From contig NC_088803.1 in assembly GCF_011386835.1 (NCBI RefSeq), forward strand, positions 51,522,001 through 51,586,000: a stretch of DNA of 64,000 nt, given 5' to 3'. The notes under the pieces were generated by a model. That model was not told where the DNA came from, ran no database searches, and was given only the letters and a program-made list of their open reading frames with translations. A program made the translations under genes and the position numbers. Origin of the DNA: Chrysemys picta bellii (lineage: Eukaryota). Positions 3,336 to 52,407 of this stretch are shown here, piece after piece. Position 1 is the stretch's first letter. Every line of letters begins with the position of its first letter.

Positions 3336-3529
3336 CTATCTTATGTACCTACCAAAGAACAAAAAAATGGTTTCTTGTCACTTGTACTCCTCACCAAAAA
3401 AAAGTGTCCAGTTCACTTCTATCCAAGTAGAAATGTATGTGCAGAGGCTTTGTCTGTGTTTGTTTAGGAAACTGCTACTCCAGCCACTCTGTCAAACTGC
3501 TTAAACACTGTTTCTAGAATTGTGCTAAT

Positions 3530-3870
3530 CAGGGCCGGCTCCAGACACCAGCCCTCCAAGCATGTGCTTGGGGTGGCACCTGGAGGGGGGCGGCGCTCAC
3601 CCGGGGGAGAGCGGGACCCCGGCCGGGCTCGCCGCCCTCCCCCGGCGCTCCGGCTGGCCGGGGGAGAACGGGGCCGCGGCTGGGCTCGCCGCCCTCCCCC
3701 CAGCGCTCCGGCCGGCCGGGAAAAGTGGGGCCGCCCTCCTCCCGGCGCTCCGGCCGGCCGGGAAGAGCGGGGCCCTGGCCGGGCTCGCCGCCCTCCCTGC
3801 GGCGCTCCCCGCTGGGGGGCGGCAGGAGGGTTTTTTGCCTGAGGCGGCAAAAAAGCCAGAGCCAGCCCTG
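3530..3870. mobile_element. hAT non-autonomous element with internal GC-rich minisatellite
   Basis: TIRs cagggccggctc / gagccagccctg. gtgctaat at 3522-3529 and 3872-3879. Repeated ggccgggctcgccgccctcccccggcgctccggc units at about 3610-3810. Confidence 0.8.
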
Positions 3871-3880
3871 GGTGCTAATG

Positions 3881-4198
3881 CAGGAGTCGGCAACGTTTGG
3901 CACGCAGCTCATTAGGGTAAGCACCCTAGCGGGCCGGGCCAGTTTATTTACCTGCTGACGTGGCAGGTTCGGCCGATCGCGGCTCCCAGTGGCCGCGGTT
4001 CGCCGTCCCGGGCCAATGGGGGCGGCGAGAAGCGGCGAGGGATGTGCTGGCTGCGGCTTCCCGCCACCCTCATTGGCCCGGGACGGCCAGTGGGGGCCGC
4101 GATCGGCCAAACCTGCCGCGTCAGCAGGTAAATAAACTGGCCCGGCCCGCTAGGGTGCTTACCCTGGCGAACCACGTGCCAAACGTTGCCGACCCCTG
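3881..4198. mobile_element. hAT (Charlie-like) MITE
   Basis: TIRs caggagtcggcaacgtttggcacg / cgtgccaaacgttgccgacccctg and a perfect 8-bp TSD TGCTAATG (3873-3880, 4199-4206). Confidence 0.88.
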
Positions 4199-8018: not shown

Positions 8019-9086
8019 TGTGACAGGTTCCCCGGGATGCAGCCTGGGACTGTGGAACCGCTGTGCCCTCTTTACTCCCTATTCTGGGTTGTCTCTCACA
8101 ATGCCTTACTAGTGGCAAGCAGCAAACCCCTGCAGGTACTGTTACCACTCAGTACAACTGCACGTGGAGCCCCACACCCAGCTAAATTGCATGAATGCTC
8201 CCAGAGCCACTCCTGAATCACACAGAGAGAGGCACCAGAGCCAAATCCCCCAAGCTCCCAGCCTTGTACCTCAGGCATATATCGTCTTGCACTGCTCAAG
8301 ACCCTTTCTTGAGCAATGCAAGTTTATTAATTGGTTCACCACTTCATCAATGGGAAGTGGACATACATGAGTCTTTGTAATTTGAGCATATTTACCAAGC
8401 ACTTCAGGCAAACTCACTGGTAAAGATAAACAGTAAAACAAGTTTATTGATTACAAAAGATAGATTTTAAGTGATTATAAGTGATAGGCAGAAAGTCAGA
8501 GTGGTTACCAAAATAAAATATAAGCACGCATTCTAAACCTTAACCCTTATCACACTAGGCAGTATTTAGATCAAGCAATGTTCTCACTCCACCGGCTCTT
8601 ACAGTTCTTAATATACAGGTTTGTCCCTTAAACATGGGCCAGTCTTCTCTGTTGAAATCTTCTGTCTTCTCAACGTCCTTGTTGCTTGCAGCATAGGTGG
8701 GGGAGGAAAAAGGACCCAGGTTGAGCAATTCCCCTGGTGTGGCCTTGTGCAAGTGAGTCATTGCATTGTAGCTCCCTTGCTGGACAATGGCTGTTGATAG
8801 TTGTTCGACACTTGCCTGGGCGTTGGTTATCTCCTTGGTTATCGTCTTTGGGGGCGCTAGTATCTGGGCGCTTCCCAAACCCTTAGCATATTTTAGTGAC
8901 AATCATACAACACAACTCTCATAACTTCATATGCATTAATGATATATATTTAGATGTAACAATGGGTTTCAGCAGATCATAACTTTTCCCATGATACCTT
9001 ACAAGGCATACCTTGTATGCAACATCAAAATTATATACAAATAAATATGGGGGTTACAGGGTGCTCCCCTGGGGTGTAGTGTCACA
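8019..9086. mobile_element. Solo LTR (about 1.07 kb)
   Basis: Termini TGTGACA...TGTCACA and 5-bp flanks gtatt / gtagt (4/5). Confidence 0.75.
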
Positions 9087-9131: not shown

Positions 9132-10188
9132 CAGGAGTCGGCAACCTATGGCACGCATGCCAAAGTTGGCACGCGAGCCAAATTTTAATGGCACTCTGCA
9201 GCCCCGCACACCTCCCAGGCCCGTGCCCTGAGCCCTGCACCCCGCACACACCCCAGGCTCCTGCCCTGAGCCCTGCACCCCCCTCATACACACCCAGACC
9301 TCTGCTTGACTCTTTCACCCCCTCCGCCCCCAGGACCCCAGCCCTGACTCTGGCACCCCCGCACCCCATGCCCTGACTCTTGCACCCCCCACATACCCAT
9401 CCCCACCCTGAGCACCAAACAGGAGCTCCTGTTCCCCCCCCCCACATTCCCACCTGCACCCCTCACACCAAATGGGAGCTGCCCAGGTAAGTGCCCCACA
9501 CCCAAACCTCCTGCCCCAACCCTGAGCCCCCTCCCTCATTCTAGCTCCTGGCCAGACCCTACACCCCAACCCCCAGCCTGCTCCTTCACCCACAGCCCTG
9601 TGCTCAGTGCACTCCCACCCTCAGCTCAGTGCAGAGAGAGGAAGAGAATGGGCCAGAACCAGGGAGAAGGTAGTTACCCACTGTACATGGGCAGGGCCAG
9701 GACCCCAGACCGGCAGTGGGTTGAGCGGGTCCGGCAGCCGGGATCCCAGCTGGCAGGAGCCGGCTGATGGAACCCCTGAGCGACAGCGGCCTGAGCCGCT
9801 CAACCCACTGCCAGTCTGGGGTCCCGGCCGCGGGCCCCGCACAGCCCACTGCCGGTCAAGGGTTCTTGCTGCCAGACCCTTGCCAGCCTGGGTCCCGGCC
9901 GCAGGCCCCGCTCAGCCTGCAGCTGGCCTAGGTGAACAGAACCCAGGACCAGCAGCGGACCGGCGGCCTAAGATCAACATTTTAATTTAATTTTAAATGA
10001 AGCTTCTTAAACATTTTGAAAACCTTGTTTATTTTACAATAAAACAATAGTTTAGTTATATAATATATAGACTTATAGCGAGAGACCTTCTAAAAAACAT
10101 TAAAATGTATTACCGGAACGCGAAATCTTAAATTAAAGTGAATAAATGAAGACTCGGCACACCGCTTCTGAAAGGTTGCTGACCCCTG
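9132..10188. mobile_element. hAT (Charlie-like) element
   Basis: TIRs caggagtcggcaacc / ggttgctgacccctg, a perfect 8-bp TSD TCTTAGAC (9124-9131, 10189-10196), and internal C-rich tandem repeats. Confidence 0.9.
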
Positions 10189-10363
10189 TCTTAGACAATC
10201 ATTTAAAACACAGTGGCTTTTAGACACTCCATATTACAGCAGTGACCAATATGTTGTTTTTTTTGTCTGCTCCCAGACAGGAGATTGCAACCTTTTCTCT
10301 CCGGTTTGGACCTTGCTGCTGTTATCCGTGGCATTGTCACCTCAAAATTACATTACAGTAATG

Positions 10364-10545
10364 TAGAGTAGTGTGGTCTAGTGGATAGAGCAGTAGATTG
10401 CGACTCAAGACCTGGATTCTATTCCTAGCTCTACCATTAGCCTGCTCTGCGACCTTGGGCAAGCCACTTCACCTTTGTGCTCCGTTTCCCCATCTGTAAA
10501 ATGGGGATAAAGATTGACCTCCTTTGTAAAGCACTTTGAGATGTA
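10364..10545 (+). mobile_element. MIR-like CORE-SINE
   Basis: tRNA-like A box (tggtctagtgg), B box (ggattctattcc) and the CORE motif cttgggcaagccacttcac...gtttccccatctgtaaaatgggga. Confidence 0.8.
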
Positions 10546-12234
10546 GTTATGGAAATTGCTATATAAATTATAATATGCTCTCTGTGGGGCCACACATTAA
10601 ATCCTTTTGAAAACTGAAGCTGGTGTAGAATGCTACAACTCACTTGTTAAATGGTGTATCTTGTAGGGGAGCACACAGCATCAGCACTCTGATCTGCGTT
10701 GGCTTCCTATTGGTTTGAGTGAATTTTAAAGAGTTGGTTTTGACCTATATAGCAATAAATCATTTGGGACCTGTCTACTGGAAAAACTGCCTCTCTCCCT
10801 ATATGATACAGCCACATGTGCACTCTGCAGAGATGCAGAACCCCCTTGATGGGGCATTCTCAGTGATGTCCTGCTGGCTTTCCAAAATAGCTGTAATCTG
10901 TTGACTTTTAGGACATGCTGCACCGACCATCCATTTGCTCAGGATTTTGGCAATGGCTAAGCTGTGTGTGTGTGATTGGGTTTTAGGTTTGGGTCTGTTT
11001 GGCTATTTTGAATTGATGGCTAGTTAACTTTGTTGTGTGTGTGGTCACTGTTGCTCTGTTGGCTGATTATTCCTTTGTGGACTATTTTAAATAATTATCA
11101 TAATGGCTAAAGGTATGAATGTCATTTTTTATTGGAATAAAAAACTTGCAAATGTAATATTTACAACTTTACATACATGTGTATTATTTTCTAATATTCT
11201 TTTCATTCTTCTGCACTTATACTAATTGTTGTAATAGTCCATTACATTTTTGACTTCTGAGGCAATTTACCATGTCAGGTGGTCTGTTTTGTCAGAGTTT
11301 TTTTCACAAGTACTCATGTTAAACTTCATGTATAATAGATGTTGTTGTGAAACTGTAGTTTATGGTATCCTTTTAATATGAATGACCTCAGGGACCACAT
11401 GGAATTGTAGTAGACCTGTTGTTGCTCAGATTTTCCAAAATCTTCATCTTGGGGAAAAGACCAAGCCTGGAAAATTTCAGCTGGAAAGCCACAATTTAAA
11501 GTGGCTGAAAACAGTTTGTGTACTAGCCTGCTGTGATAAAATCTTAACTGTCATGGTCAGTGAAACTCTTGCTGTAGTATTAAAATATGAATTGCTCAGT
11601 ATAATCCAGTGAGTTACATTGATTATCTTATATTGCCTATCCATCTACGTTGTTTGTGATAGCTGTGATGTAACCACCTGCTTCATAGAACAACAGCAAA
11701 GACTGCAACCCACGTTGGAAGGATCTGGTGGAGAACCTTAATTGAATTGGTTCTGATGTATCTCTTGAAACAGAAAGTGCGCACATATTACAAATTACAA
11801 GATTATGGGTCATATAATATTGCAGTTCACCTTCAGGCTTTCTCAAGGGATGGAAGAGTTACTCACACTAAATTTGTTTCTCACCATGTATTAGAATAAG
11901 TCTTTAGTGGTTGGCAACGGAAAACGCTAACAGAGTTTTTTTTGCTTTAATCTTTGAGTAGTCTGGACATTAGAAGCATGTGAGTTGCATGTTTGGGATT
12001 GAGTAAAAATGTGTAACTGTTTTAAATTAAAATATGTAATGGACAATAAAAGTTGAGACCCAAACCAGAACTCTTACCATCTACTTATGAAAGCAAAACC
12101 AGTAGGTCCTCTTCCTATGTACTGTTGGTGCCTAGCCGTTTAGTCCTAAGATTAGAAATGCACGTGTCTAGATATCTCACCTTGAAAGTTTGAATTCTTT
12201 GTATGTTTCTCTAATGGTGTTTTTATTTACATAG

Positions 12235-12510
12235 GTGCTGATGTGACAGAACCCAGCAATTCGGATAGCCGAGTGGAGAGATCAGACCTTTACACAAATG
12301 TTGATGAAGCACTCCTAGGAGGTGATGCTAGCTACCTATCTCAGCCTCTTACCCCGGAGAAGGATGATGCACTTCAGGCTGCGACAGTTGCTAACCTGCG
12401 CGCAGCCCTCATGAGTAAGAACAGCTTGTTATCTCTGAAAGCTGACATGCTGGGAGAGGACAGTTCTCTGCTATTCGAGTACTTACCCAAAGGCACACAT
12501 TCTTTATCTC
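12235..12510 (+). CDS. ZBTB46: ZBTB46 internal coding exon (276 nt, phase 1 to 1), linker region upstream of the zinc fingers
   Basis: Acceptor ttttatttacatag|GT and donor TCTC|gtaagt. Encodes ADVTEPSNSDSRVERSDLYTNVDEALLGGDASYLSQPLTPEKDDALQAATVANLRAALMSKNSLLSLKADMLGEDSSLLFEYLPKGTHSLS, which matches the recalled vertebrate ZBTB46 sequence (...TPEKDDAL...ANLRAALMSKNSLLSLKAD...LLFEYLP). Confidence 0.93.
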
Positions 12511-13220
12511 GTAAGTTTATACTTTTATATTTTTGCTTAAAGATTAATTTAAAAACTAATTAGGGGAAAAAGGAGGAAATTCAGGTCACTCTAGATTTAT
12601 TACTCCTTTGCTAGTTTTATCTGTGTTAAACTTCTGTATAAATGCACATCCCATGAGGTTTAGAATCCTGTTGTCTGTAATGTTATGCAGCATAGCTCTA
12701 GTACCAATTGTCGGAAATATAAAAGGTATTAGGGAGATATTTATTACATTGATTTGGACATTGTGCTAATTGACAAATCACTAGCATGGTTTTACGTATT
12801 TAGAGAGTATGGAATATTTGACTTTTTCAGTTAAAGAATGGATGCTGTGTAGGATTTGAATAAAAAAGTAATCAATCTTAAAGCCAGGTGGGAAGGAGCT
12901 GCCACTCCAGTAAATTTTAAAAATAAAATAGAGTTGTAGTCATGTTTGTAGACCCAACAAGCCGAATCCTTTTTTGCTTCTTCCTTTGGATTTTCTGCAT
13001 TTGATAATGAACAAATACAGTTTCTATAGCCATTCTGACTTCCACTATGCTTATGCACAAAGAGTAATACTTCTTGTTTGTTTGGGGGGTTTATTTTAGG
13101 ACTAAATATTTGATGATTACAAAAACTGGAATTGAGGAAGGAAGGAAAATTCTTGATAGCATCTTGTAACGAGTCACTTGTACATTTGCTAAGTATCCCC
13201 AAATAATCAGGGTAAACGTG

Positions 13221-13355
13221 TTTACAGTATTGCTGTAGCCGTGTTGATCCCTGGATGCTAGAGAGACAAGGTAGGTGAGATAATACCTTGTATAGGACCA
13301 ACTTTTGTTGGTGAAAGAGACAAGCTTTTGAGCTTACACGGAGCTCTTTTTCAGG
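13221..13355 (-). mobile_element. Penelope-like element terminal fragment with degenerate hammerhead
   Basis: Minus strand reads CTGAAAA-AGAGCT..AGCTC-AAAA-GCTT. Flanked by near-direct repeats tcagggtaaacgtg (13207-13220) / tcaggataaaagtg (13351-13364). Confidence 0.6.
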
Positions 13356-15461
13356 ATAAAAGTGATCATTCTGTGCATTCATAACTTAAAACATACTTTC
13401 TTCAAGTCTGAAGCATGTGGAAGCATCATAGTTCATAGGATGATTTCCTGGTTGCTTCAGGTTATGTTCTACTGGTTATGTGTACACACCATTAATAAGA
13501 ACTTGAGTATATATTCTTCCCTGTGTTGTAAAGTAGTTCTATAGTTTCTTCTAGGCAGAAGTCTTTTATAAAGTGTTTTAGATAAAACTTGGTAGGCTGG
13601 AGAAAATAGAAATAACAACCATATATGCTGTATTGAGATGGTATTTTCAGTAGTGGGGGAGAAGAACACTGGCTGGGGCATCGTACAGAGCAAAAGATGG
13701 CCATTAGCAGTATATGCAGACTTCCAGAAAAAAAAAATTAAGGCAGTGAATGACCCAAATAAACAAAGTGAAAAGAACATTTAGCACATATTTGATTTTT
13801 ATTTATTTTTATTTTTGAAGGCCAAAATGTTTAGGTCACCTTTAAGCTAACAATCACCTGAATTGCATGATGAATTACAGTGCAGTGGCAATGCAATTAA
13901 ACATAACATAATGGCAAATCTTAATATATATTAATTTTTTTGTTGAAGTTAGTCTGGTTTTAAAACTAAGGGGGGTTGGTGGTTGTAATCTTTTTTTGCA
14001 GCTTGGAGTTATGTGTTTTGTTTGTTTTTGGGGTGATGTTTTGCATTTTTTTTTAATTGGTAGGGTAGCTTCTTTACTTTGGTAATCTCTCTAAGTAAAT
14101 AAGTAGAATATTCTGTTGTTCAGACTACTCCTAGAGTGCAAATGGCCCCATTGCAATGAAGCAGCACATGGCCCTTTGTACCACCTAAACTCTTGTTGCA
14201 ACTGTATGGAGGAACCTGTAAGCAGAGTGTTTGCACAGGGGCATTTTTGCCCTCCTTGCATTCTATAGAAAGGGTCTCCTCACTAGGCCTACAGATGGGT
14301 GGAGGCTAGAAATAGGGCAGGTCAAGGGAGGGGACCTGGGATCAGTGTTACATGGACAATGTGTCACGCCCACTGCTTCTAGGAGTAATAGCATGATGAC
14401 GCAGTTTCTGCCTTCATTGGCAAGAGTAACAGCTCTGGGAGGATGCCACACTGCAGCCCCTCATCTTGGCCCTAGATTGGCAGGTATTTGATTTCACATC
14501 CTTGTGCTTTCACCAGCACATGAAATTCACCCACATAGACCCTAATTACTTGGTCTTCATGCAAGTGAAATGCATTTCTTCTGAAGTTAAGAGAAAAAGA
14601 TAATTGGTCTATAGTTCTTGCCACAACCATGCCCAAAAGTCTGGGGAGACTCATTTTACAGCTGATTGAATCAGGGAATTGGGGGGAGGGGGACCCTCCT
14701 CTTTATTTTTTATTAGGCTCCTTGCTGTTTGTTAATGTATCACTAAGAGCTGCTGGCATAATTTTGAGTGTACTTGTTTTATAATGGTCCCTTCAATCTG
14801 AATATCTTTCTAATGTTAATTCTTTAGTGATATTTAACTCTATACACTAAAATTTCTCATTAAACTTTATATCATGTTTTTTTTTTTTTTTGTTAAAAAG
14901 CCATAAGTGATAGCTTGTTGTTAAATCCGTGTTTGGGATTAAACTCATAAGTTATAACGTATCATGTGATTAAGGCACTGCTAATACATTCAGAACATGC
15001 TATTTAGGTTAGTAGTCGATCTTTGGATTTTTTTCCCGCCCATTATTTCAGTTCTTTACTTTCCTTCTCAAACCCATGAGTTGAGGATTTTGTCATTTAA
15101 ACCTTTGAAACTTAAAAAAAAAAAAAAAAAAAAAAGGCAGTGAACAAAGTTCTTTAAAAAAAAACACATTATTAATTGTAGTTTTGTTTTCTATCTTGTC
15201 AAATCTGAAAATGACATGCACTAACACCAAGCATTTCTAAATGGTTTTCAACCTGAAGCTTTAAAAAAAGAAAAGAAAGTGTGTTGGATCTTAACCATCT
15301 GTTGATTCAGTTGTCTTCCTGACCCAGAAAATAATATTGTAAGAAGATTACCTAAATAGTGTTGGTAATATTTGCTGTCCTTTCTCTGAGTAAGGTTGAG
15401 GTAAGGAGGAATAGGTTGTCAGAGTGTATTTTCTTTGTTTGACATACTCATGAGCTTTCTA

Positions 15462-15737
15462 AGGGGGGTGTAACTCTCACTGTTAGGGATGCAATGAGGG
15501 CAGGGAATCAGGGGGCCCAGGATTCCCGCCCTCCTTGGCCATAGATGGGGAGGGGGTCCCAACTCTCAGGGTGATGCAGGGAGGGGAAAAGTGTTTCAGT
15601 CAGTCAGTGTCTCTCCTGTGGGAGGAGAGCGAGAAGAGGTCATGGCAGTGGGGGGGAGGAGGGGGAAGGGGCCGACGCATACACACAAATGCACCTCTTG
15701 GACTCCCTCTTTTAGGAAATTTCTGGTTGCACCCCTG
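15462..15737. mobile_element. hAT-like MITE
   Basis: Right end ggttgcacccctg versus left aggggggtgtaact, with a GC-rich body; no TSD recognised. Confidence 0.5.
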
Positions 15738-17519
15738 GTTGCTGTAGAAATACAGGGTTTTTTTCAGTTTTTCTCTGGCATAGTTTATACTGTTGTAAGA
15801 AGCTAATTGAGAATACATAAAGGTGCTCATCATACCTTTGCTGATTTTTCTAATGGATTTTAAACCTGAGAAATCTTTGTGCTTGGTGAGTAAAGGGAAC
15901 TGCTGATTACTAAAAGGCTTAGTTTCATGTCAACTTTACTGTGGTATTGTAAACATTAAGCTAACAAAACAAAGTGTAAAATTCTGTGTAAATGAACATT
16001 AATTTTAAAGGATGTACAAGCATTGTACCTTTTGTAATGATGACACTGAAAGAGAAGCATGAAATCCCTAATATTCAATTAATGGACAATGGAAATACAG
16101 GATGATTCCTGTTTCAGTGGATATTCATATATTGTGTTTAGAACAACTGAGCAGAAGGTAATGCATACTTTTAAACTTAACCAATTCAAATCAGCTTAAA
16201 AATAAAAGTAATAAAAAAATTAAATTTATTTTCATTTCTTGCCATTCAGGTAATGCTATAGGAAATAAATTGATCTGATTACTTTTTCCATATTTTCCAT
16301 AGTTAAAAAGTCAGTTAAGTTTTCCGTTTTCTGGTGATTGAAATCAACTCTCATTTAAAAAAAAATTTGTCATGTTTTCAGATTAGTCTGTTCTAAAGTT
16401 CTCCATATGTCCGTTTGGATCTTCCTGTTTACTCTCTCTGTTTGTTTATAGAAGCAATTCCTATGAGGCGTGTTATACAACAGATTGCATGGCAAAAAGG
16501 GCCATTTTCTCTTGGGCTAACCAGTTAATATTTTATTTTTAGATATGCATTGAAGCCAATAATTTATACTTTCACTAAAAGTTAAAGGAATACGTTTATA
16601 CTGTGGTCAGTTTTCCCAAGTGGTATTCATGTAGGCAGGAACGTTTTCTGACAAGATTTAGAGGAGAGTTGATGTCATTTTAAGCATGTCATAATCATCT
16701 TGGCATTTCAATTTAAGTTTTCTACAGGAGTTGACTGTTAAATCTGTTAGTGCTCTTGGCAGTGGAGGATACTATTTTCATGTCGCTATCACTGAGATCT
16801 TCTATGTATATTTTTCCATGAACAGTGCTGACTACAGGACAATTGATAGTTTTAATTTCTGATTAAGAAAATCGTCTTGCTTCCATGAAACAATTTAAAG
16901 AAAAAAATAATCTTAACATTTCTTACTATATTAACCAGAATGGATTAAAACCTAAACTCAGACATTGTTTACTTACATGCATAGTACAAAACATCAATGA
17001 TATACCTTCATTTGATACTTGCAATTGGTGGAAACAAACAAGTAGATATTAATTGTTGTTCTGTATCTATTTTATGCTGCATATCTTTCCTTTCCATTTT
17101 CAGGAGTGGCATATTATTTCCCCTTATGCTCCAAAAAATTGCCCATTCTATTAGCCTTCGCTGTTGCTTTAATAAGTGGGCAGCTGTTTACTTCACGTTT
17201 ATTACCAAGTATAGCTTCCCAAGGGAACTAGCAAGGGAATTACGAAAGCTAAACCACTGTTTCTTACTTTGCTAAAGTTCAGACTACTTTTAGCCTGAAT
17301 TGGACACCGTATGTAAGTTCTCTAGAGTCACAATGCAGAGCTGCAATGTAAACAGGGCAATATGCATCAGTATTGTAGATTTAATCAGAACACCAGTTAA
17401 TCTCATATTTGTGTAGGTGGACTGTGATTGTGCAATTACCTAAAGTGTTGTAATACTATAAACCTGATTTTTTTCCCCCCATGATTCATTTGAACGTTGA
17501 AAATATTTTTTACTCTGTA

Positions 17520-18125
17520 TCTCAAAGAAGATGTATTAGAATTGGAAAAGGTACAGAGAAGGGCAACAAAAATGATTAATAGTATGGAACAGCTTCCACA
17601 TGATGAGAGATTAAAAAGACTGGGACTTTTCAGCTTGGAAAAGAGATGACTAAGGGATATGAGAGAGGTCTATAAAATCATGAATGGTGCGGATAAAGTG
17701 AATAAGGAAGTGTTGTTTACTCCTTCACGTACCACAAGAATTGGGTCACCCAGTGCAATTAGTAGGCAACAGGTTTAAAACAAACATAAGGAAATTCTTC
17801 AGACAATGCACAGTCACCTGTGGAACTCATTGCCAGGGGCTATTGTGGAGGCCAGACCTATAACAGGATTCAAAAAATAATTAGATAAGTTCATGGAGGC
17901 TAGGTCCATCGATGGCTATTAGCCAAGAAGGTGAGGGATGCTCTAGATGTTCCTAGCCTCTGGGTGCCAGAGCAGGGACTGGACAACAGGGATGGATCAC
18001 TCGATGATTGTCTGTTCTGTGTATTCTCTGTGAACTATCTGGCATTGGCCGCTGTCAGAAGACAGGATACTGGGCTGGATGGACCATTGGTCTGATCCAG
18101 TAGGCCGTTCTTACATTCGTATGTA
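17520..18125 (+). mobile_element. CR1 LINE 3' fragment (ORF2 C-terminus plus long 3'UTR)
   Basis: Encodes [12 protein letters not shown]...LGLFSLEKR and ends gggctggatggaccattggtctgatccagtaggccgttcttac. Confidence 0.88.
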
Positions 18126-19234
18126 CTCTCCATGTGTTCTTGAACCTGCCACAGACCATTGCCCATTCACAAGGAAATCACATAAGTTCTAATGGTAAAT
18201 TAAGACAAGAAATCCACCTGTTTATAACTGGAGATAGTAACTTAGTAATTTAATTTTGCCTCATTACTGCCTACATTTAGTTTTTCTTGGCATTCTCCAC
18301 TGCCCTGCAATGTTTATTGTTAAATAGAAGGAAAGCTTGAAAATATTCTCTTTTCATTGCTCCTGAATGTAACTAACTAAACTATGAGAGTAACTTTAAT
18401 ACAGAAGACCAAAACAGAGGAGGCCAAACCAGAAGATAGTAAGAAGTGCAAGAGTAGCAGTGGTGTTTCACATGAACTAAAACTTAAATAAACTGAGGAA
18501 GTAATGGGGAATCCTTATTACAAGGCATATTAAAGTCACTTTAATCTTTTTTGGTATTTAATAAATGTTGGGCGGTTTTGTTTTGTAGTGGGTGGTTTAA
18601 GTAAGAGACTCTTACCCAGTTTCGGTGGAATGCTCCATTGTAATTTTGATTAAGTTGTATCTTTTGTGAAATAATTGTTCATGCCATGCAATTTAACATT
18701 TGCACGTATTTAATAATTTGATTAAAATTATGCTAAATTTTTATACACCTTGTTTGCTATCTTGCAAGCAAATTATTGTACTCTCTTGTAATAAGAATGA
18801 AAAGCCTTTGAAAGGACTTAAAGTATTTTAAATTGTGCTTTTTTTACAGCTTAGTTTACAATACCATATTGAACAATGCATATACAGTATTTGTTCCTAA
18901 TGATTTTGCCCACTTTCTTTTCACAAGCAATCGTTTGTTTGTGAGATTGAAATGAGGCAACAATTAAGATGGCTGTTAAGGTTTAATTAACAATTTTAAA
19001 CTTGTATAGCAATTTGTCTTAGTCAAAACATCATTATATATTTTCACCATTGATTGTCAACATACTTTCTGAGTACTGTATACCATTTAGCTGCTGTCAC
19101 AACATGAACAAAGGGATACACTTTTATTTTGTCTGGCACAGCAAAAATAAATTGGCCTTTTAGTGGCCAGTCATTTTCTTTTCCCTTAAACTGTAGTAGA
19201 GGTTTAGAATGTAATTCTTTTTAGGGTTTAGTTA

Positions 19235-19350
19235 TGCAACCTCGTACAAGTCTCTTAAGCTCTCTGCTTTCCCAATCATAAAATGTAGGTAGTACTTTCT
19301 CACCTTTTGTAAAGCACTTTGAGATCTGGGATTAAGGATACTATATAAAA
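19235..19350 (+). mobile_element. MIR-like SINE fragment
   Basis: Decayed CORE plus the tail ttgtaaagcactttgagatc, shared with the copy at 10364. Confidence 0.5.
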
Positions 19351-19809
19351 CAAATTATTTTATTTATTTATTATGGTTAAATGTTGGGCTTAAAACTTTG
19401 ACAGAATTTTTAAAGACAATTATATGGATAGTGGATAAATAATTTTTGTATATGTTCATGGAAAATTTAGAGCTATATGTTTGAAATAGTACTTGTTAAA
19501 GCAGTGTAATTGTTAAGAATATTTGTGCTACCTTTTTGCTTCTTTCTCCCATATGACTCTCTTTAGTGACCATATTGCTGCTGTGAGCTATAACCCCCAC
19601 CCCATACATCACATGCAGACAACTGGCATTTTGGGTGGGGAGGCTGGTTATAAAAACACAAAAGGCCTGGCATCACTACACTGCTGCGTTCCCTCCCACT
19701 GACAGAAGATAAACTGCAAGTGCTCATTCACTGCCTTTTCAGGGCCTTTTTTAAAACCACCAGCTGGTGCTAGTTCACGTGGGTGAGACTCGTTTCCTGT
19801 GTTCCCCAG

Positions 19810-19982
19810 GGCCTGGTGCCAACTTGAATCGTTCAAGGGGCGAATTTGATGGCAAAGTGGAAGCACCATCTCCCCTGCTGCCTTCATCACACCTTGCCAC
19901 TCAGAGCCCCCCTGTGATCTCCTGTTCTGGTGAAATGTCACCAGAAACCATGATAAAAGGAAAGCTGTCTTCCTCGGCTCAG
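19810..19982 (+). CDS. Predicted alternative exon A (173 nt, phase 1 to 0), Ser/Pro-rich linker
   Basis: Acceptor cgtttcctgtgttccccag|GG and donor CAG|gtaaga. Open in the frame continuing from 12510 (C+GG=Arg): RPGANLNRSRGEFDGKVEAPSPLLPSSHLATQSPPVISCSGEMSPETMIKGKLSSSAQ. Confidence 0.65.
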
Positions 19983-21178
19983 GTAAGATCAAGAGATAGC
20001 GGCAAAAATTTGTAAATGTTAGGGGGGTTTAACACACATTCTCCCTAGTAGAAAAACGTGCAGTGACCATCGTATTTTATACTTTTGCCATGTCACACTA
20101 GAGTTACATTTTCAAAATATCGTTAATTTAAAACTTCAGCAAAAAAAATCCAGATTTGCTCCTGGGCTGGATTAAGAGCTAATATTTCCCTAATTTTGCA
20201 GCTCCCTTTCCCTTTTTTCTTTCTTTCTTTCCGCAGTGGAACGTACATCCAAAAGTAATTAGTGTTTTTTACAAAAATGGCATGTGTGCTTTTTATTATA
20301 AAAAACATTAAGAGTTATAATACAGTATAAGGATGCTTGAACACGCAAGTGTCCAGTGTGCTTTTTTACTCAGTACTTAAACATGGATAGAAGCAGGGAT
20401 TGCTTTCCGTAATGGAAAAGTTTCTGAACTAAAATATGTAGCTGTCAGTAATGAGTTACCTTTTTAAATATTTTTGAATGAGTTATTTACTCCATTTGTT
20501 TAATAAGGAGGCAAAATACAGCTCTTCCTTTGCAGTCACCTTAGAAAAAAACACATGGTAAGAAAGGTTAATTAATCACCCCACCCTGTCCCCAATCTCT
20601 GAGAAACCTACCCAGACTACAACATCCGCACTATTCCATAGACAGGGTCACCATCTGCCATGCAGTGGCATAGTGCAAACTGCTTATGCCAAATTCAGAT
20701 CAGTAATATCATGTAGTCTTAACATAAAAGAAACTGAGGAGAGCATGATTTTGCTTGATATGGCTATTTCTGTATGGAAAGAAAAATATCAGTAAAGGGT
20801 TAAGGGCAAACTAGGTACCTGGATCCATATGCCAGCTCTTAAATAAAAGTAGCCTGACTTTCAGAATTGCTCTGCACTGTGGTTCCCATTAAGTTGAAGG
20901 GAGCTGTGTGTGCTAGGCAACTCTGAAAATGGAACCACATTTACTTACGAACCCAAATATGAATTTAAATTCCTATCTAGGTTCCCTTCTTCGTGCTCCA
21001 AACTTGAAAACTTGACCTCCATCTCTAAATTTGTTAATAATGAAAAGTCTGTAGAAGAGAAATTAATTATTGCTGAATAGAATGCTGGATCTCTGTTAAA
21101 GAAGTGGAGGGTTGGTGGGTGGGTGAGAAATATTTTTCTGTGTGTTTATTTTAACTTAATTGCACTTTTCATTTGCAG

Positions 21179-21230
21179 GCCCCCTGTGATGGATTTTTAG
21201 CACTGTGGCAGTTTGACAACTCTGACACAG
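21179..21230 (+). CDS. Predicted alternative exon B (52 nt, phase 0 to 1)
   Basis: Acceptor ttaacttaattgcacttttcatttgcag|GCC and donor CAG|gtaaat. Only the phase-0 frame is open (APCDGFLALWQFDNSDT+G), and this is the frame needed to join exon A to exon C across an 85-nt intron. Confidence 0.62.
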
Positions 21231-21315
21231 GTAAATGGAGAGAACAATACCTTTAATAAAAAATTATTTTGTACTTAAAGTCATTAACGTGTGTGTGCAT
21301 GTGTTTCTGTTTTAG

Positions 21316-21908
21316 ATATAAACATTTCAAGATCTGAAGATGACTTAAGGAATGAAGGCCTGTTCTCGGATTCAACCTTAACCAAGAGTCTGACTTGTGG
21401 TTTCTGCAGGAGGGTTTTTGAGTGCACTGAAAAGTTGAAGGAGCACATACACGAGCATGCTTTTTCCATGATTCTTCCTTTTGACTTAATTGACTGTGCC
21501 AGACCTGTGCTCATTGACCTCACTGATCATGTGTCCCAGGATCAGCTTGCCCGTTTCCAATGCTCTAAGTGCCCTGCAAGCTTCACACTAAAATCAAATA
21601 TGGATAGGCATGAAAAGACAATCCACTTTAACCACAAGAAGATGCAGTGTCCTGACTGCTTAAAACTCTTCCGAGACAAAACAGATCTGAACCGGCATCT
21701 CATGTCCGTGCACTCAGATGAACGTACCTTTGTGTGTCTCTTTTGCAGTAAAGGTTTTGGTACACAAAAGAATCTCACTACTCATATGAAAGTGTGTTAC
21801 CTGGGCTCTGCCCAGCCAATGGGTGAAGAAGTTCTGGATCGTGTGGATCAAAATCAGGAACCTGAGGAGGTCCATCAAAGCTGTATTAAGGAAATGAGAA
21901 AATCATGA
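21316..21908 (+). CDS. Predicted alternative terminal exon C encoding four zinc fingers (3 C2H2 + 1 C2HC)
   Basis: Acceptor cattaac...gtgtttctgttttag|AT, phase 1. Uninterrupted ORF to TGA at 21906-21908. Fingers: CGFC-x12-H-x3-H (21396-21458), CSKC-x12-H-x4-H (21561-21626), CPDC-x12-H-x4-H (21648-21713), CLFC-x12-H-x3-C (21735-21797). Confidence 0.85.
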
Positions 21909-23620
21909 AATTGGAGGGAGATGGGATCACATGTTTTAGGCATTAATTTTTTTATTAAATCCATAAATTAAGAGGAGTATATTGCTGCATTGTTACTTGC
22001 CGAAAATGGGTTTACCATTGGATAAGCTATAACACTATAATAATTCCCAGATATTGGACAGATTGGTCAGGCATTATTTCAGTTCCAGATTTTGTAAACT
22101 AAAAACTCTAATTAGAATCAAGATGCAATTTTGTGTAAGAATATTTTTGATAGATAATATAATGGTATTTTGGATTACTCCTGATTAGAGGTTGCATTCC
22201 CTTTAAATTTTTACATGTCATGATTAAGAGCTTTGGCTTGTGTATTTTTTAAATATAAGCTCAAGCCTTTAGAGAAGATTTAATTTGTTATACAGAGATA
22301 ATGGTTTTAAAGATAATTAATTTATTTTTAAAAGCAGTTTTAAAAGATTCCTTTGTAAACATAGCAATTCATGGCAGTATGTTATTTGCTGTCCCTATGT
22401 ACTGTGGGGGTCTTTATGAATGGAAATGATCAGTGATTGTAAACATTTCCTTGGTTTAAAATTCTGCTTTATGGGTTCTGTTAAAAATAGTCTCAAATGG
22501 ATTATTGAGAAGTATACAGGATAACTGCATTTGGGAGTGGAAGAGGGTGTGTCTCTGTGTCAACTTTGTCATCTAAGGAGATTTCCTCCTCTGATGTTAG
22601 GCATTACACAGTTAAACTATAAGCTTGTTCTGTACTGCAGCTAAAGTGAATCTGTTCTGAAAAGAACAAATTCCAGCAGATCTCAGGCATGGGAAGAGGA
22701 AGATAGTCCTACCAGAAAAGGTGAAGCTGGCCTGCTGTTTAATACAATTAGAATATGGCATTTTGAGATTTTTTTTTTAAACTTCCTTTGGCTTCCTGCC
22801 AATGTATCATGTATGTGCACTCAGCCACTTCCTCTTCCCTAAAACACTCTGGTTGTTGCCTGTATTAGGTGAGAAACTCTGTTGAACCACTGTGCAAGTA
22901 TTTCTGCTTTGCTGAATGTCTTCATTTATACTCGTTTTTAAAACCACATAAAACTTCTGGAATGCTATTGGACAAAGATTAGATTTATATTGCATCAAAC
23001 AGATTATAAAAGAAACAGAACAACAAAAGACCTAAACTTTGCAATTGCACAACTGTGGGATTGAGCTGCTAGTTCCATCTCTGGCCCAAACTGCCAGTTA
23101 ATGAAAGTACTTTGCTATCACCAAATGCCACAAGCTATTTATAAAGAAGTCCAGCTTTCTGTATCATATTTAGAAACTCTGTGCTACTTGGGCATGGTTC
23201 TATACTAGGATTTTTTTCAAATTGCTGCAGGGTTAAGAACATTAGATTATTTAGTATGCTGCTGAATGTTACCTGGAGTTATTTTCTATATCTAGGAGTA
23301 AGAATGTGGCATTCAAAAACTAAGTTTCTTCAAGTGTTTTAACTCCGTCAATTGGTCTGTACATTGTGGTTGAGCCAGCCCAATTGAATGTACATAAAAA
23401 TAGATCCTCTTGCTTCAAAAAGCCTAATACTATATAGTGGGGACAGTGGAGCTTGACAATCAGCCACTGTTACTGGAAGGTTGAAGTCTAACTATAGTTC
23501 CCATTTAATTACTTTGGTTCAATTATTTGAAAGCTGTGAACTGTTTAACTTACAGCTTGCTATTTATTTTCATACAAATACATATTAGTTTAATTACTCT
23601 AACAATTGCTGTAGTTTAAG

Positions 23621-23977
23621 CAGGGCCGCCCGGGGGGGGGCAAGTGGGGCAATTTGCCCCGAGCCACGCAGTGGCCCCCACAAGAGTTTTTCGGGGCCCC
23701 TGGAGCGGTGTCCTTCACTCGCTCCGGGGGCCCTGGAAAACTCTCGCAGGGCCTGGGCCCACGGAGCGTCTTCCGCACCAGGTCTTCGGCAGCAATTCAG
23801 CGGCGGGGGGTCCTTCTGCTCCAGGACCCGCCACCGAAGTGCCCTGAAGACCTGCGGCGGGGGGTCCTTCCGCCCCAGGACCCGCCGCTGAAGTGCCGGG
23901 TCTTCATCAGCAATTCGATGGCGGGGGCCCCCCACCGCCGAAGACCCCAGACCCCCTGAATCCTCTGGGCGGCCCTG
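23621..23977. mobile_element. hAT MITE
   Basis: TIRs cagggccgccc / gggcggccctg, a perfect 8-bp TSD AGTTTAAG (23613-23620, 23978-23985), CpG-rich body. Confidence 0.9.
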
Positions 23978-33415: not shown

Positions 33416-33591
33416 TAAACGAATTCACAGTCATCAGAAAAAAATTCAAGTGCCCATACTGCAGTTTCTCAGCCATGCATCAGTGTATCCTGAAGAGACA
33501 CATGCGATCCCATACAGGAGAAAGACCCTATCCTTGTGAAATCTGTGGGAAAAAATTCACACGCAGGGAGCACATGAAACGGCACACCTTG
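33416..33591 (+). CDS. ZBTB46: ZBTB46 canonical zinc-finger exon (176 nt, phase 1 to 0; two C2H2 fingers)
   Basis: Acceptor ctttttcag|TA and donor TTG|gtaagt. C(12510)+TA gives Leu, then NEFTVIRKKFKCPYCSFSAMHQCILKRHMRSHTGERPYPCEICGKKFTRREHMKRHTL, with a canonical TGERP linker. Confidence 0.95.
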
Positions 33592-34197
33592 GTAAGTAGG
33601 AGCGTTTGAAGTCGTTGGAAAATAGAAAGATGGTTTGTTGTGCTTAAGGAGAAAAGGAATTTCACCTGACTTAGATTTGTGTTCTGTTTTTCCCCTGGTG
33701 CTCTTCTGAGTCTTTTATGGAATGCAAAAGACCTCTGTCCTGTTTTCTCCACTTTTAAAAGTCCCAGGGTCTTGCTTATTGTTCCTCTGGAGTTATTCAA
33801 CAATGGGTCCTCCAACTCAGCCAGAGTTGTTGCTGAAGAACAATTTGAAGTGGTCTGCACACCCTGTTTAGTGCTCCTGGCCCCAAAGTGAGGGACTGAG
33901 CTGGAATCTCAAACCTCACTTCCTATTGCACGAAACTATTTTTTAATGCAACATAGACTGCTGTGGAGGACCTATTAGACTTTGGTGCTTCAAGGCACAA
34001 GAGACCATGTTATTTTTAGTATCAAAAATGTTGGCCTAATAGGCTGAATAATTAGGAACAAATTTTTTTGAAGTAATACATCACCCAGTAAAAGCAAGGA
34101 AATTCTGTTCCAGGACTACCGCTATCCTGTTGCGCTTAATTATCATTTAATACATAATTTCATTAAAGATTGCTTGCTGTTCAGACAGCTGCTAGAA

Positions 34198-34508
34198 CAG
34201 GGATCGGCAACCTTTGGTATGCGGCTCGCCAGAGTGGGCCGGGTCAGTTTGTTTACCTGCCGCATCCACAGGTTCAGCCAATCGCAGCTCCCACTAGCGG
34301 CGGTTCGCCGCTCCAGGCCAATGGGGACTGCGGGAAGCCGCGGCCAGCACATCCCTCAGCCCGCGCCACTTCCCGCAGCCCCCATTGGCCTGGAGCAGTG
34401 AACCATGGCCAGTGGGAGCTGCGGTTGGCCGAATCTGCAGACGCAGCAGGTAAACAAACTGGCCCGGCCCACCCCGGGGAGCCGCGTGCCAAAGGTTGCC
34501 GATCCCTG
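34198..34508. mobile_element. hAT (Charlie-like) MITE, same family as 3881-4198
   Basis: TIRs cagggatcggcaacctttgg / ccaaaggttgccgatccctg and flanks tgctagaa / tgcttagaa. Confidence 0.85.
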
Positions 34509-35176
34509 TGCTTAGAAGGTCAATATGTGCTGTTGTAACTTGCTGGCTTGTCTCAACTGAAGCATTGTTATAAACACATGATATTGTGTGTGCATTTTTT
34601 TGTCAAATTTCCTTCTTTGGTGGTAGTATTTTCCCTTCCATGCATTTGTTAGCATCATTTCTATAGACTTGCACTTGACAAGCCTTCACCTTGATGGTGT
34701 GGGGTGATATTGTGGGATAGTCCAGATTACATGAAGTCCCATCTGGTGATAGTGAAATTAGATATCGTTGTTCATACTCACTAGCTACTTTTTCAAAACC
34801 TTAATATCCTGGCAATTTCTATTTATCATAATAAATTCAGTACACACAAACTAGAAGTGCTAGAATCTAACACTTGCCAAGTTTATTTTGATTTTATTTT
34901 TAAGCAGAATGTTTGGGCTAGTATTTGACACAAAGGAATCTAAAACTAACTCGCATTTTTCTCCAACAACAACAAAAAACCCTTGAAACAGTTTTAGTTT
35001 AAAAAGAACAAATTTTATGTCAACTTCTAGCACAATAGTTTCAACAGCCAAGACCAGCACTGTCCCTCTCCCCTTAAATCAGGTCTGTAGCAAAAACACC
35101 AGTTTCAGCTTTAATTTTAGGGATGGTAGCAGCTTCATAATAATACTTTCTCATACATCAACTGGTTTGTAACACT

Positions 35177-44252: not shown

Positions 44253-44642
44253 GTCCACAGCAAAGATAAAAAATATGTATGCAAAGTGTGCAACAGAGTG
44301 TTCATGTCTGCCGCCAGCGTGGGAATTAAGCATGGTTCCCGACGCCATGGAGTTTGTGTTGATTGCTCTGGTCGAGGCATAACAGGCCACTTAGATCAGA
44401 ATGGAGGAGAAGGATCTCCAGATGAATTGTATCCTGGTGAAGGCCAGTACATGGAGGATCCAGATGACATGAAGGTGGAGGGAGATGAAGAGATGGGGGA
44501 TGATGATGATATAAAATGGAAAGATGATGTAGGAATTTCACAAGATGATGTGATTCTAGAAGATGACAAAGAAGATGTCGACTCTCCACAGGAGCAAGAG
44601 AACTCTGGAGAGAATGACAAGGATTTTACTTGGATTTCTTAG
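44253..44642 (+). CDS. ZBTB46: ZBTB46 terminal coding exon (atypical third finger plus acidic tail, TAG stop at 44640-44642)
   Basis: Long polypyrimidine tract ending ccctag|GTC. Encodes VHSKDKKYVCKVCNRVFMSAASVGIKHGSRRHGVCVDCSGRG...EGSPDELYPGEG...DKDFTWIS*, in frame after the phase-0 donor at 33591. Confidence 0.94.
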   Translation, partial: VHSKDKKYVCKVCNRVFMSAASVGIKHGSRRHGVCVDCSGRGITGHLDQNGGEGSPDELYPGEGQYMEDPDDMKVEGDEEMGDDDDIKWKDDVGISQDDVILEDDKEDVDSPQEQENSGENDKDFTWIS

Positions 44643-50305: not shown

Positions 50306-50343
50306 GTTAGTCTCAAAGGTGCCACAGGACCCTCTGTTGCTTT
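50306..50343. mobile_element. 38-bp Penelope-like terminus micro-insertion
   Basis: gttagtctcaaaggtgccacaggaccctctgttgcttt resembles the reverse complement of the 40741 element. It is flanked by a perfect 16-bp direct repeat gttctcagaacaggct. Confidence 0.6.
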
Positions 50344-52163: not shown

Positions 52164-52407
52164 CAGTGCCGGCTCCAGCGTTTTTGCCACTCCCAAGCGG
52201 CGGAAAGAAAATAAATAAAAGTCGCGAGCGGCAGCACTTTGGCGGCACCTCTACCACTGCCGCTTCATTCTTCGGAGGCAATTTGGCGGCAGGTCCTTCC
52301 CTCTGAGCGGGACTGAGGGACCCGCCGCCGAAGAGCCGGACGTGCCGCCCCTTTCCGTTGGCCGCCCCAAGCACCTGCTTGCTGCGCGGTGCCTGGAGCC
52401 GGCCCTG
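52164..52407. mobile_element. hAT MITE
   Basis: TIRs cagtgccggctccag / ctggagccggccctg and TSD atcacacc / atcgcacc (7/8). Confidence 0.87.

What the first reader, a model, noticed from the sequence alone, without database searches (positions are those of the whole stretch)
19810..21908. Hidden three-exon cassette giving ZBTB46 an alternative C-terminus with a different zinc-finger array
Seen: three exons sit inside the ZBTB46 intron, each with a good branch site, pyrimidine tract, AG and, for A and B, a CAG|gta donor. Their phases chain exactly: 12510 (phase 1) to 19810-19982 (1 to 0), to 21179-21230 (0 to 1; only this frame is open), to 21316-stop. Direct 12510 to 21316 splicing is also in frame (C+AT=His). 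The product would be about 272 aa ending in four intact fingers, replacing the 188-aa canonical tail. Established: Drosophila BTB-ZF genes (lola, fruitless, broad, tramtrack) swap DNA-binding fingers on a shared BTB domain by alternative 3' exons. Inference: a vertebrate ZBTB46 does the same here. I do not recall this from mammalian ZBTB46 and cannot tell whether reptile annotations already include it. An independent nested gene is the alternative explanation.
Basis: partly seen in the sequence, partly recalled or inferred. Interest (0 to 1): 0.92.

Follow-up and report, generated by a model that had tools for sequence, protein, structure and literature searches.

The report
Alternative zinc-finger tail inside ZBTB46
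Three small exons inside an intron of the transcription-factor gene ZBTB46 are real, spliced together in RNA and conserved from bony fish to reptiles and birds, and they encode a second four-finger DNA-binding tail that most likely replaces the usual one, although the join to the upstream ZBTB46 exon was not seen directly.

Summary
Exons A (19810-19982), B (21179-21230) and C (21316-21908) have the stated splice sites and phases, and exon C encodes four C2H2-type fingers.

- **RNA evidence:** RNA-like contigs from three runs, three studies and two organisms carry the GT..AG joints A/B and B/C. One 2.5-kb contig holds A+B+C plus at least 1.7 kb of 3'UTR. It breaks from the genome exactly at 19810, so the exon-A acceptor is used.
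- **Conservation:** the same cassette lies in the same intron, strand and phases in a bird, two geckos and an electric eel. Exon C has dN/dS of 0.09-0.27. The DNA-contact residues of fingers 2-4 are unchanged between eel and window.
- **No start codon of its own:** in geckos the A-B-C frame has no ATG before finger 2, so translation must enter from an upstream phase-1 exon. ZBTB46 exon 3 ends in phase 1 in window, bird and eel.
- **Gap:** the 12510/19810 junction was not seen. A separate upstream first exon is not excluded.
- **Prior annotation:** automated pipelines already hold pieces under inconsistent names, such as "ZNF425-like, partial", "MECOM-like" and "ZBTB46 isoform x1". Three literature searches found no description.

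Verdict: real and ancient, probably an alternative ZBTB46 C-terminus. Moderately interesting.

The parts
12235..12510 (+). It is 276 nt, enters and leaves in phase 1, and has a gtaagt donor. It is the proposed splice donor for the cassette.
   Evidence: It is 90% aa identical to bird L003:2300-2578 (dN/dS 0.044) and 54% to eel L002:2824-3096. Run X20 holds all of its sampled words but none of the cassette's.
19537..19809 (+). Conserved sequence immediately upstream of exon A, either a splicing-regulatory region or an internal promoter. The last 35 nt (19775-19809) are nearly identical in bird, geckos and eel.
   Evidence: blastn gives 77% identity to bird over 19537-19990 and 77% to gecko over 19629-19949. 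The tract 19779-19814 is 89% identical to eel L002:8679-8714 (alignment A1). An A-rich, TATA-like 'GGTTATAAAAA' sits near 19647.
19810..19982 (+). Exon A, 173 nt, phase 1 to 0. It encodes 57 codons of a low-complexity linker.
   Evidence: Contig pieces in X10 and X2 start exactly at 19810, and the joint 19982/21179 appears in X2, X9 and X10. Its length is 173, 173, 167 and 221 nt in window, bird, gecko and eel, all 2 mod 3. dN/dS is 0.47-0.99 with an unusually low dS of 0.18 against bird.
21179..21230 (+). Exon B, 52 nt, phase 0 to 1, 17 codons (APCDGFLALWQFDNSDT).
   Evidence: Joints on both sides appear in contigs. It is 52 nt in window, bird, gecko and L005 and 43 nt in eel, all 1 mod 3. 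dN/dS is 0.12-0.40 in most pairs.
21316..21908 (+). Exon C coding part, phase-1 acceptor. It holds finger 1, a spacer of about 35 aa, three tandem fingers (the last C2HC), an acidic tail and the TGA stop.
   Evidence: dN/dS is 0.09-0.27 across window, bird, gecko, a second squamate-like locus and eel, with dS saturated.
21909..23614 (+). 3'UTR of the cassette. This is its minimum extent; the true poly(A) site was not determined.
   Evidence: X10 contig 14 (2554 nt) and X2 contig 23 run from exon C past 22800 for about 815 more letters. They stop where a GC-rich repeat begins at about 23620.
33416..33591 (+). Canonical finger exon (finger 1 and half of finger 2), phase-1 acceptor. It is the alternative to the cassette.
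   Evidence: It is 98% aa identical to eel L002:14479-14652.
44253..44642 (+). Canonical last coding exon (rest of the fingers, an acidic tail and the stop).
   Evidence: It is 57% aa identical to eel L002:15610-16041.

Best explanation

Proposed mechanism (inferred): a transcript that has spliced the phase-1 donor at 12510 either uses the distant canonical finger exon at 33416, or uses the exon-A acceptor at 19810. In the second case it splices A to B to C and ends at a poly(A) site inside the intron. The product keeps the N-terminal BTB and linker part. It swaps the 188-aa canonical tail (two to three fingers) for a 272-aa tail with four different fingers.

Expected consequences (inferred): the contact residues of fingers 2-4 differ from the canonical ones and are frozen from eel to reptile, so the isoform should read a different, conserved DNA motif. 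Through the shared BTB domain it should still dimerise and recruit the same partners.

Shown here: the exons, their splicing to each other, use of the exon-A acceptor, protein-level selection, and deep synteny with phase conservation.

Inferred: the partner exon upstream of A, the DNA specificity and the dimerisation.
For: 1. **Spliced RNA.** GT..AG joints at 19982/21179 (X2, X9, X10) and 21230/21316 (X2, X10). One contig (X10, record 14) carries A+B+C+3'UTR with 0 mismatches in A, plus 30 further letters that do not match the genome upstream of 19810. X2 record 20 also starts at 19810.
2. **Above background.** Cassette contigs have depth 16-63, against about 0-15 for the flanking intron in the same runs.
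3. **Same layout elsewhere.** The order exon 3, A, B, C, canonical finger exon holds on one strand in eel L002. Exon 3, A, B, C lie on one 11-kb bird contig, L003.
4. **Frame kept.** Exon lengths keep the frame in every species: A is 2 mod 3 and B is 1 mod 3. All splice sites are kept.
5. **Selection.** Exon C has dN/dS 0.09-0.27. The helix positions -1, 2, 3 and 6 of fingers 2-4 are identical in eel and window.
6. **Phase match.** The exon-3 donor is phase 1 in window, bird and eel. The A and C acceptors are phase 1.
7. **No own start in geckos.** In both geckos the frame has a stop 39-60 nt upstream of exon A with no ATG. The first Met of A-B-C is residue 169, inside finger 2. The conserved finger 1 can therefore only be translated from an upstream exon.
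8. **RefSeq model.** Gekko japonicus XP_015283868.1 is A+B+C, 5'-partial, starting at the first full codon after the acceptor.
9. **No rival first exon found.** No ATG-bearing exon with a phase-1 GTRAG donor is conserved between exon 3 and A in window and bird.
10. **Naming.** A godwit protein made only of exon C is named 'ZBTB46 isoform x1'. This suggests, but does not prove, that a RefSeq isoform with this tail exists.
Against: - The 12510/19810 junction was not observed.
- NCBI models the eel copy as a separate two-exon gene starting at an ATG in exon B, while the eel host gene's longest recorded product is the canonical 620 aa. Ensembl and UniProt list a stand-alone junco protein.
- In run X9, contigs cover about 19155-19979 continuously and are spliced only downstream. 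This could be a retained intron, or a start site inside the 'intron'.
- The 270 nt upstream of A are as conserved as A itself and contain a TATA-like tract.
- Exon A has dN/dS near 1 against bird.
- A profile search allowing proteins of 264-840 aa found no long BTB protein with this tail. The sensitivity of that search is doubtful.
- The identity of the host gene as ZBTB46, and the BTB exon, lie outside what these tools tested.
Confidence: 0.65

Rival explanations
1. An independent gene nested in the intron. It would have its own promoter, either a dedicated upstream first exon or a start site in the conserved block just before exon A. It would make a finger-only protein of about 230-290 aa with no BTB domain, sharing only the locus with ZBTB46.
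For: - Separate-gene models exist in eel (XP_026875019.2, ATG in exon B), junco (A0A8C5JEK9) and Gekko (ZNF425-like).
- The window and bird have an in-frame ATG at codon 42 of exon A.
- X9 contigs run unbroken from about 19155 into exon A.
- A conserved block with an A-rich, TATA-like tract lies upstream of A.
- The eel exon-A region is GC-rich and looks like a CpG island.
- Run X20 has exon 3 but no cassette. This fits either model.
Against: - Exon A is entered through its acceptor in X10 and X2.
- Geckos have no usable ATG before finger 2 and have an in-frame stop just upstream of A.
- The eel ATG in exon B and the window and bird ATG in exon A are not conserved with each other.
- The eel model has no 5'UTR, because its gene range starts at the ATG, so it looks like a CDS-only prediction.
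- The Gekko RefSeq model is flagged 5'-partial at the acceptor.
- No conserved ATG-bearing phase-1 first exon lies between exon 3 and A.
Confidence: 0.22
2. A and B are mainly internal cassette exons. A+B is 225 nt and runs phase 1 to 1, so B could also splice to the canonical finger exon at 33416. That would insert 75 aa into the normal protein, with B to C being only one of two outcomes.
For: A and B carry consensus donors that a purely terminal cassette would need only to reach C. Nucleotide-level constraint on exon A is unusual (dS 0.18), as is often seen in regulated cassette exons.
Against: - Every contig that leaves B goes to C, only 85 nt away.
- No B/33416 joint could be looked for, because 33416 lay outside the stretch that was laid.
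- The strong protein-level selection on C shows that the B to C product matters.
Confidence: 0.08
3. A decaying relic or transcriptional noise: exon-like sequence that is spliced but makes no functional protein.
For: Locus L006, from an unidentified taxon, carries exon C with a frameshift after finger 2 and a stop after finger 3. No hit with a mammalian source name was found. Exon A has dN/dS up to 0.99.
Against: - Exon C has dN/dS 0.09-0.27 with saturated dS.
- The frame is intact in window, bird, two geckos, L005 and eel, and all indels are multiples of 3.
- Finger contact residues are invariant across the fish/tetrapod split.
Confidence: 0.03

Closest known systems
Drosophila BTB zinc-finger genes with alternative finger-encoding 3' exons (lola, fruitless, broad, tramtrack); established knowledge, see the lola papers listed
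   Same: Common 5' exons are followed by mutually exclusive terminal exon sets. Each set encodes its own C2H2 fingers, stop and 3'UTR, and the alternatives are arranged in series along the gene.
   Different: - Here there are only two alternatives, not up to about 20.
- The join to the common exon is inferred, not shown.
- The fly genes belong to the Tramtrack-group BTB class, which the abstract of PMC11426971 calls arthropod-specific. This is therefore an analogy, not common descent.
- lola also uses trans-splicing, for which there is no hint here.
Vertebrate BTB-ZF genes whose isoforms differ at the finger end, such as PATZ1/ZBTB19 (recalled from memory, not checked here)
   Same: Alternative 3' exons change the C-terminal finger content on a shared BTB domain.
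   Different: As far as I recall, those isoforms add or drop fingers of one array. Here a completely different four-finger array would replace the canonical one. This one is conserved from teleosts to sauropsids, and no copy with a mammalian source name was found.
Automated models of the same sequence: XP_015283868.1 'zinc finger protein 425-like, partial' (Gekko japonicus), XP_026875019.2 'MECOM-like' (Electrophorus), PKU28720.1 'ZBTB46 isoform x1' (Limosa), A0A8C5JEK9 (Junco), KAL8179711.1 (Gekko kuhli)
   Same: They are orthologous sequence (49-77% aa identity to exon C). The G. japonicus model has exactly the A+B+C structure.
   Different: None is joined to a BTB domain in the records seen. 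The names are inconsistent and transferred by similarity. Several are unspliced ORF read-throughs.
Canonical ZBTB46 tail (window 33416-33591 plus 44253-44642)
   Same: Both tails have C2H2 fingers followed by an acidic tail, and both are entered through a phase-1 acceptor.
   Different: - Identity is only about 35% over 51 aa, which is generic finger similarity.
- The canonical tail has two classical fingers plus one atypical finger, against 1+3 fingers in the cassette.
- The recognition residues differ: canonical HCIR and REHR, against CEKE, LSNR, DTDR and TKNT in the cassette (read).

Membership tests
Alternative 3' terminal finger cassette of a BTB-ZF gene (lola-like architecture) | The alternative exon set encodes its own C2H2 fingers, stop codon and 3'UTR, and lies upstream of the other finger exons on the same strand. 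| tested here: met
   Four fingers, TGA at 21906, and a 3'UTR of at least 1.7 kb in contigs. The canonical finger exons lie 11.5 and 22 kb downstream.
Alternative 3' terminal finger cassette of a BTB-ZF gene (lola-like architecture) | Transcripts join the common (BTB-side) exons to the cassette. | tested here: inconclusive
   The acceptor at 19810 is used and 30 contig letters continue elsewhere, but those letters were not shown. Junction-pattern scans of metagenome contigs found neither this junction nor the canonical one, so they are uninformative.
Alternative 3' terminal finger cassette of a BTB-ZF gene (lola-like architecture) | Reading-frame compatibility between the common donor and the cassette acceptor, kept in evolution. 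| tested here: met
   A phase-1 donor and phase-1 acceptors are present in window, bird and eel. Exon lengths keep the phase in five loci.
Alternative 3' terminal finger cassette of a BTB-ZF gene (lola-like architecture) | The host gene encodes a BTB domain upstream. | not testable with these tools
The BTB exon is not in the window: no BTB-like ORF appears.
Independent nested gene | Its own conserved start codon ahead of the conserved domains. | tested here: not met
   Geckos have no ATG in A, B or C before finger 2, and have an in-frame stop just upstream of A. The ATGs in eel (exon B) and in window and bird (exon A) are not homologous.
Independent nested gene | Its own transcription start and promoter. 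| tested here: inconclusive
   X9 coverage from about 19155, and a conserved upstream block with a TATA-like tract, are compatible with a start site. X10 shows no upstream coverage and enters at the acceptor. Contigs cannot show 5' ends.
C2H2 zinc-finger domain (Pfam PF00096 / PF13894) | The C-x2-C-x12-H-x3-5-H/C motif scoring above the Pfam cut-off. | tested here: met
   PF13894 scores 53.5 bits (cut-off 27) and PF00096 scores 50.7 bits (cut-off 25.2), with 3-4 stretches. Four motif matches are found. All zinc ligands are conserved in five species.

The most novel reading that the evidence does not exclude
A vertebrate BTB-ZF gene swaps its whole DNA-binding array in the way fly lola, fru and broad do. 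ZBTB46 would have had two mutually exclusive finger tails since before the teleost/tetrapod split. The second tail would read a conserved, different DNA motif and would be regulated through an ultraconserved intronic element at the exon-A acceptor. This isoform may have been lost or degraded in some lineages, possibly including mammals, where only the canonical tail is studied.
Probability: 0.55. Interest if true: 0.65.

Novelty: new member of a known kind. Interest (0 to 1): 0.55.

Why it matters
- **Immunology.** From general knowledge, ZBTB46 is the lineage-defining transcription factor of conventional dendritic cells and is also active in endothelium. All functional work I know of assumes one DNA-binding tail. 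If fish, reptiles and birds make a second isoform with a different, 400-million-year-conserved finger array on the same BTB domain, comparative immunology that uses ZBTB46 as a marker or regulator in these animals is looking at two factors, not one.
- **Transcription-factor evolution.** It would be a clean vertebrate example of finger-array swapping, which is otherwise known mainly from insect BTB genes.
- **Annotation.** The same exons are filed under at least four unrelated names, which hides their orthology.
- **Splicing regulation.** The near-identical 35-nt intron tail in eel and reptile is a ready-made candidate element for regulated 3' splice-site choice.

Tried and rejected
1. The search of protein representatives with exon C. 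It was swamped by giant poly-finger proteins whose repeated hits add up. Only two unspliced bird ORFs were recovered, so it was useless for finding full-length isoforms.
2. The search for homologous proteins has a length filter that hides roughly 670-aa isoforms from a 196-aa query. I widened the length range by putting a long first row in an alignment.
   - With a poly-finger first row (A2) the list was flooded.
   - With an inert 480-aa first row (A3) no protein of 264-840 aa with this tail appeared. However, only one of the alignment's own rows (P0018) came back. I therefore do not trust the sensitivity and do not count this as evidence of absence.
3. The protein-atlas search returned generic finger clusters only.
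4. Logan contigs behind the bird proteins P0003, P0008 and P0013 are all colinear with genomic DNA. None is spliced, so they give no view of the upstream partner.
5. Degenerate junction patterns were scanned in metagenome contigs. Exon 3/A and, as a control, exon 3/canonical exon both gave zero hits. The collection simply lacks such host transcripts.
6. A second look-up of sequencing runs on exon 3 was meant as a falsification test: do the cassette-expressing runs also hold exon 3? It did show that X20 has exon 3 without the cassette.
7. Literature searches found nothing on ZBTB46 isoforms with another finger tail.
8. The search of earlier findings returned nothing.
9. Rejected: a retrocopy as the source of the joined contigs. 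The contigs are essentially identical to the window and run into an unspliced 3'UTR. This was not formally tested in DNA runs.
Full report
**1. Observation**

- A 276-nt exon at 12235-12510 ends '...tct c|gtaagt', in phase 1.
- The canonical finger exon is 33416-33591: 'tttcag|TAAAC...', phase-1 acceptor, finger 1 and half of finger 2.
- The last exon is 44253-44642.

- Exon A, 19810-19982: 173 nt, 'ttccccag|GG...CAG|gtaaga'.
- Exon B, 21179-21230: 52 nt, 'tttgcag|G...CAG|gtaaat'.
- Exon C, from 21316 ('gttttag|AT') to TGA at 21906-21908.

The phases chain 1 to 0, 0 to 1, and 1 to stop. The spliced tail is 272 codons, against 188 for the canonical tail. Exon C has four finger motifs and scores well above the Pfam cut-offs for C2H2 fingers. 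The window has no N.

**2. RNA evidence**

Contigs of four runs were laid on 16900-22800.
- Runs X2 and X10 (organism B, two studies) and X9 (organism C) carry GT..AG joints at 19982/21179.
- X2 and X10 also carry 21230/21316.
- X10 contig 14 (2554 nt) is one molecule-like path. It holds 30 letters that do not lie on the stretch, then exon A from exactly 19810 (0 mismatches), then B, then C. It then continues unspliced past 22800 for about 815 letters, to the edge of a GC-rich repeat at about 23620.
- X2 contig 20 also begins exactly at 19810.

The acceptor of exon A is therefore used, and the cassette has a 3'UTR of at least 1.7 kb.

Cassette contigs have depths of 16-63. Neighbouring intron contigs in the same runs have about 0-15. 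X1 shows only unspliced sequence.

In X9, contigs also cover about 19155-19979 without a break and are spliced only downstream. This is either a retained upstream intron or a start site upstream of A.

The letters upstream of 19810 were not printed, and read laying allows one call. **The partner exon is not known.**

Run X20 holds every sampled word of exon 3 but none of the cassette. The cassette is therefore optional.

**3. Relatives**

A protein search with exon C found 19 relatives. They come from geckos, many birds and the electric eel, plus unnamed Logan ORFs. Most are unspliced ORF calls.

Fetched loci show the architecture.
- **Electric eel (L002).** In order on one strand, inside a gene whose longest recorded product is 620 aa:
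  - exon-3 homologue 2824-3097, ending 'tcc t|gtaagt' in phase 1
  - A, 8710-8930 (221 nt)
  - B, 9995-10037 (43 nt)
  - C, 10228-10832
  - canonical finger exon 14479-14652 (98% aa identity)
  - last exon 15610-16044
- **Bird (L003, an 11-kb contig).** Exon 3 (90% aa identity), A, B and C lie in order.
- **Two geckos and a further squamate-like contig.** They have A and/or B and C with the same splice sites.
- **Frame.** Exon A is 173, 173, 167 and 221 nt, all 2 mod 3. Exon B is 52, 52, 52, 52 and 43 nt, all 1 mod 3.

The 35 nt of intron before exon A ('GTGGGTGAGACTCnTyTCCTGTGyTCCyCAG') are almost identical in window, bird, geckos and eel. In sauropsids about 180-270 nt upstream are conserved as well.

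**4. Selection**

- Exon C: dN/dS is 0.09-0.27 in all computable pairs, with dS at or beyond saturation.
- All zinc ligands are kept. The helix residues at -1, 2, 3 and 6 of fingers 2-4 (L-S-N-R, D-T-D-R, T-K-N-T) are the same in eel and window (read from the alignment).
- Exon B: dN/dS is mostly 0.12-0.40.
- Exon A behaves differently. dN/dS is 0.47-0.99, but dS against bird is only 0.18, compared with 1.15 in exon 3 and 1.6 in exon C. Its nucleotides are constrained as such, like the flanking intron. Its indels still keep the frame.
- One contig of unknown taxon (L006) has a frameshift after finger 2 and a stop after finger 3.

**5. Alternative tail or nested gene?**

For the tail:
- The acceptor is used.
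- The phase-1 donor and acceptor match in three lineages.
- In both geckos the frame meets a stop 39-60 nt upstream of A with no ATG. The first Met of A-B-C is residue 169, inside finger 2. The selected finger 1 can therefore be translated only from an upstream exon.
- RefSeq's own Gekko japonicus model (XP_015283868.1) is A+B+C. It is flagged 5'-partial and begins at the first full codon after the acceptor, on a scaffold that ends or gaps less than 7 kb upstream.
- A scan for ATG-bearing exons with a phase-1 GTRAG donor between exon 3 and A found none shared by window and bird.
- A godwit protein consisting only of exon C bears the name 'ZBTB46 isoform x1'. The name was presumably transferred from a database isoform.

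For a nested gene:
- NCBI's eel model is separate and starts at an ATG in exon B. Its gene range begins at that ATG, so it has no UTR support.
- Ensembl's junco protein is separate.
- X9 has contiguous upstream coverage.
- The upstream block is conserved and partly TATA-like.

I put about 0.65 on the alternative tail, about 0.22 on a nested gene, and the rest on mixed or other readings. One of these is that A+B (225 nt, phase 1 to 1) also serves as an in-frame insert before the canonical finger exon.

**6. Mechanism (inferred)**

The choice lies between a proximal composite terminal unit (A-B-C plus an intronic poly(A) site) and the distal canonical exons. The ultraconserved acceptor region is a likely control point. 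The product keeps the BTB side and exchanges the DNA-reading part. The frozen contact residues argue for a conserved target motif distinct from the canonical one.

**7. Known or new?**

- The architecture is that of fly lola, fru, broad and ttk. Those belong to an arthropod-specific BTB class (abstract of PMC11426971), so this is analogy, not membership.
- Pieces of the cassette are already in public annotation under unrelated names.
- Three full-text searches found no paper describing a second ZBTB46 finger tail.
- I file it as a new member of a known kind.

**8. Limits**

- The BTB exon and the identity of the host gene were not testable here.
- The run types are guesses ('RNA?'), although the exact GT..AG joints argue for RNA.
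- Contigs cannot give 5' ends or expression levels.
- Absence in mammals is only suggested by the lack of named mammalian hits.
- The long-isoform database search is of uncertain sensitivity.

Noticed in passing
window 19775-19811; L002:8679-8714; L001:5945-5977; L003:8436-8466: A 35-nt intron tail before exon A is nearly identical from eel to reptile (89% over 36 nt). It contains a 5'-splice-site-like GGGTGAGA about 25 nt before the AG. Intronic conservation of this depth suggests a regulatory element, but its role is unexplained.
   Followed up: partly
window 19810-19982 plus 21179-21230, versus 33416: A+B total 225 nt and run phase 1 to 1. Exon B could therefore splice in frame to the canonical finger exon and add 75 aa. 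No read evidence was obtainable.
   Followed up: no
window 19810-19982: The synonymous rate of exon A against bird is 0.18, compared with 1.15-1.6 in neighbouring coding exons. Nucleotide-level constraint overlaps the coding frame.
   Followed up: partly
L006 (Logan SRR22184594), 179-830: An exon B-like and exon C-like copy has a frameshift after finger 2 and a stop after finger 3. This is either a decayed copy in an unidentified taxon or a contig error.
   Followed up: partly
window 16414-16623; L003:6070-6291: A 220-nt conserved non-coding block (77% identity to bird) lies in the intron between exon 3 and exon A. It has no exon-like frame and may be an enhancer.
   Followed up: partly
window 17490-18280: A LINE-like repeat fragment, whose ORF translation resembles a reverse-transcriptase tail, has summed contig depths of 10^3-10^4 and many variant joints in all four runs.
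   Followed up: no
window 3464-4110, 23594-23960, 34170-34540: Copies of a GC-rich repeat give similar Pro/Gly/Arg-rich ORFs on both strands. One copy marks the point where the cassette's 3'UTR contigs stop.
   Followed up: no
window 50000-64000: A sharp rise in G+C, from about 0.35-0.40 to 0.51-0.65, begins downstream of the gene's last exon. Many long spurious ORFs appear on both strands.
   Followed up: no
runs X20 versus X2/X9/X10: X20 holds all sampled words of exon 3 but none of the cassette. The cassette is therefore sample-specific rather than constitutive.
   Followed up: partly
output: The profile search returned only one (P0018) of the alignment's own database members. Its candidate selection is not understood, so the negative result is unreliable.
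   Followed up: no
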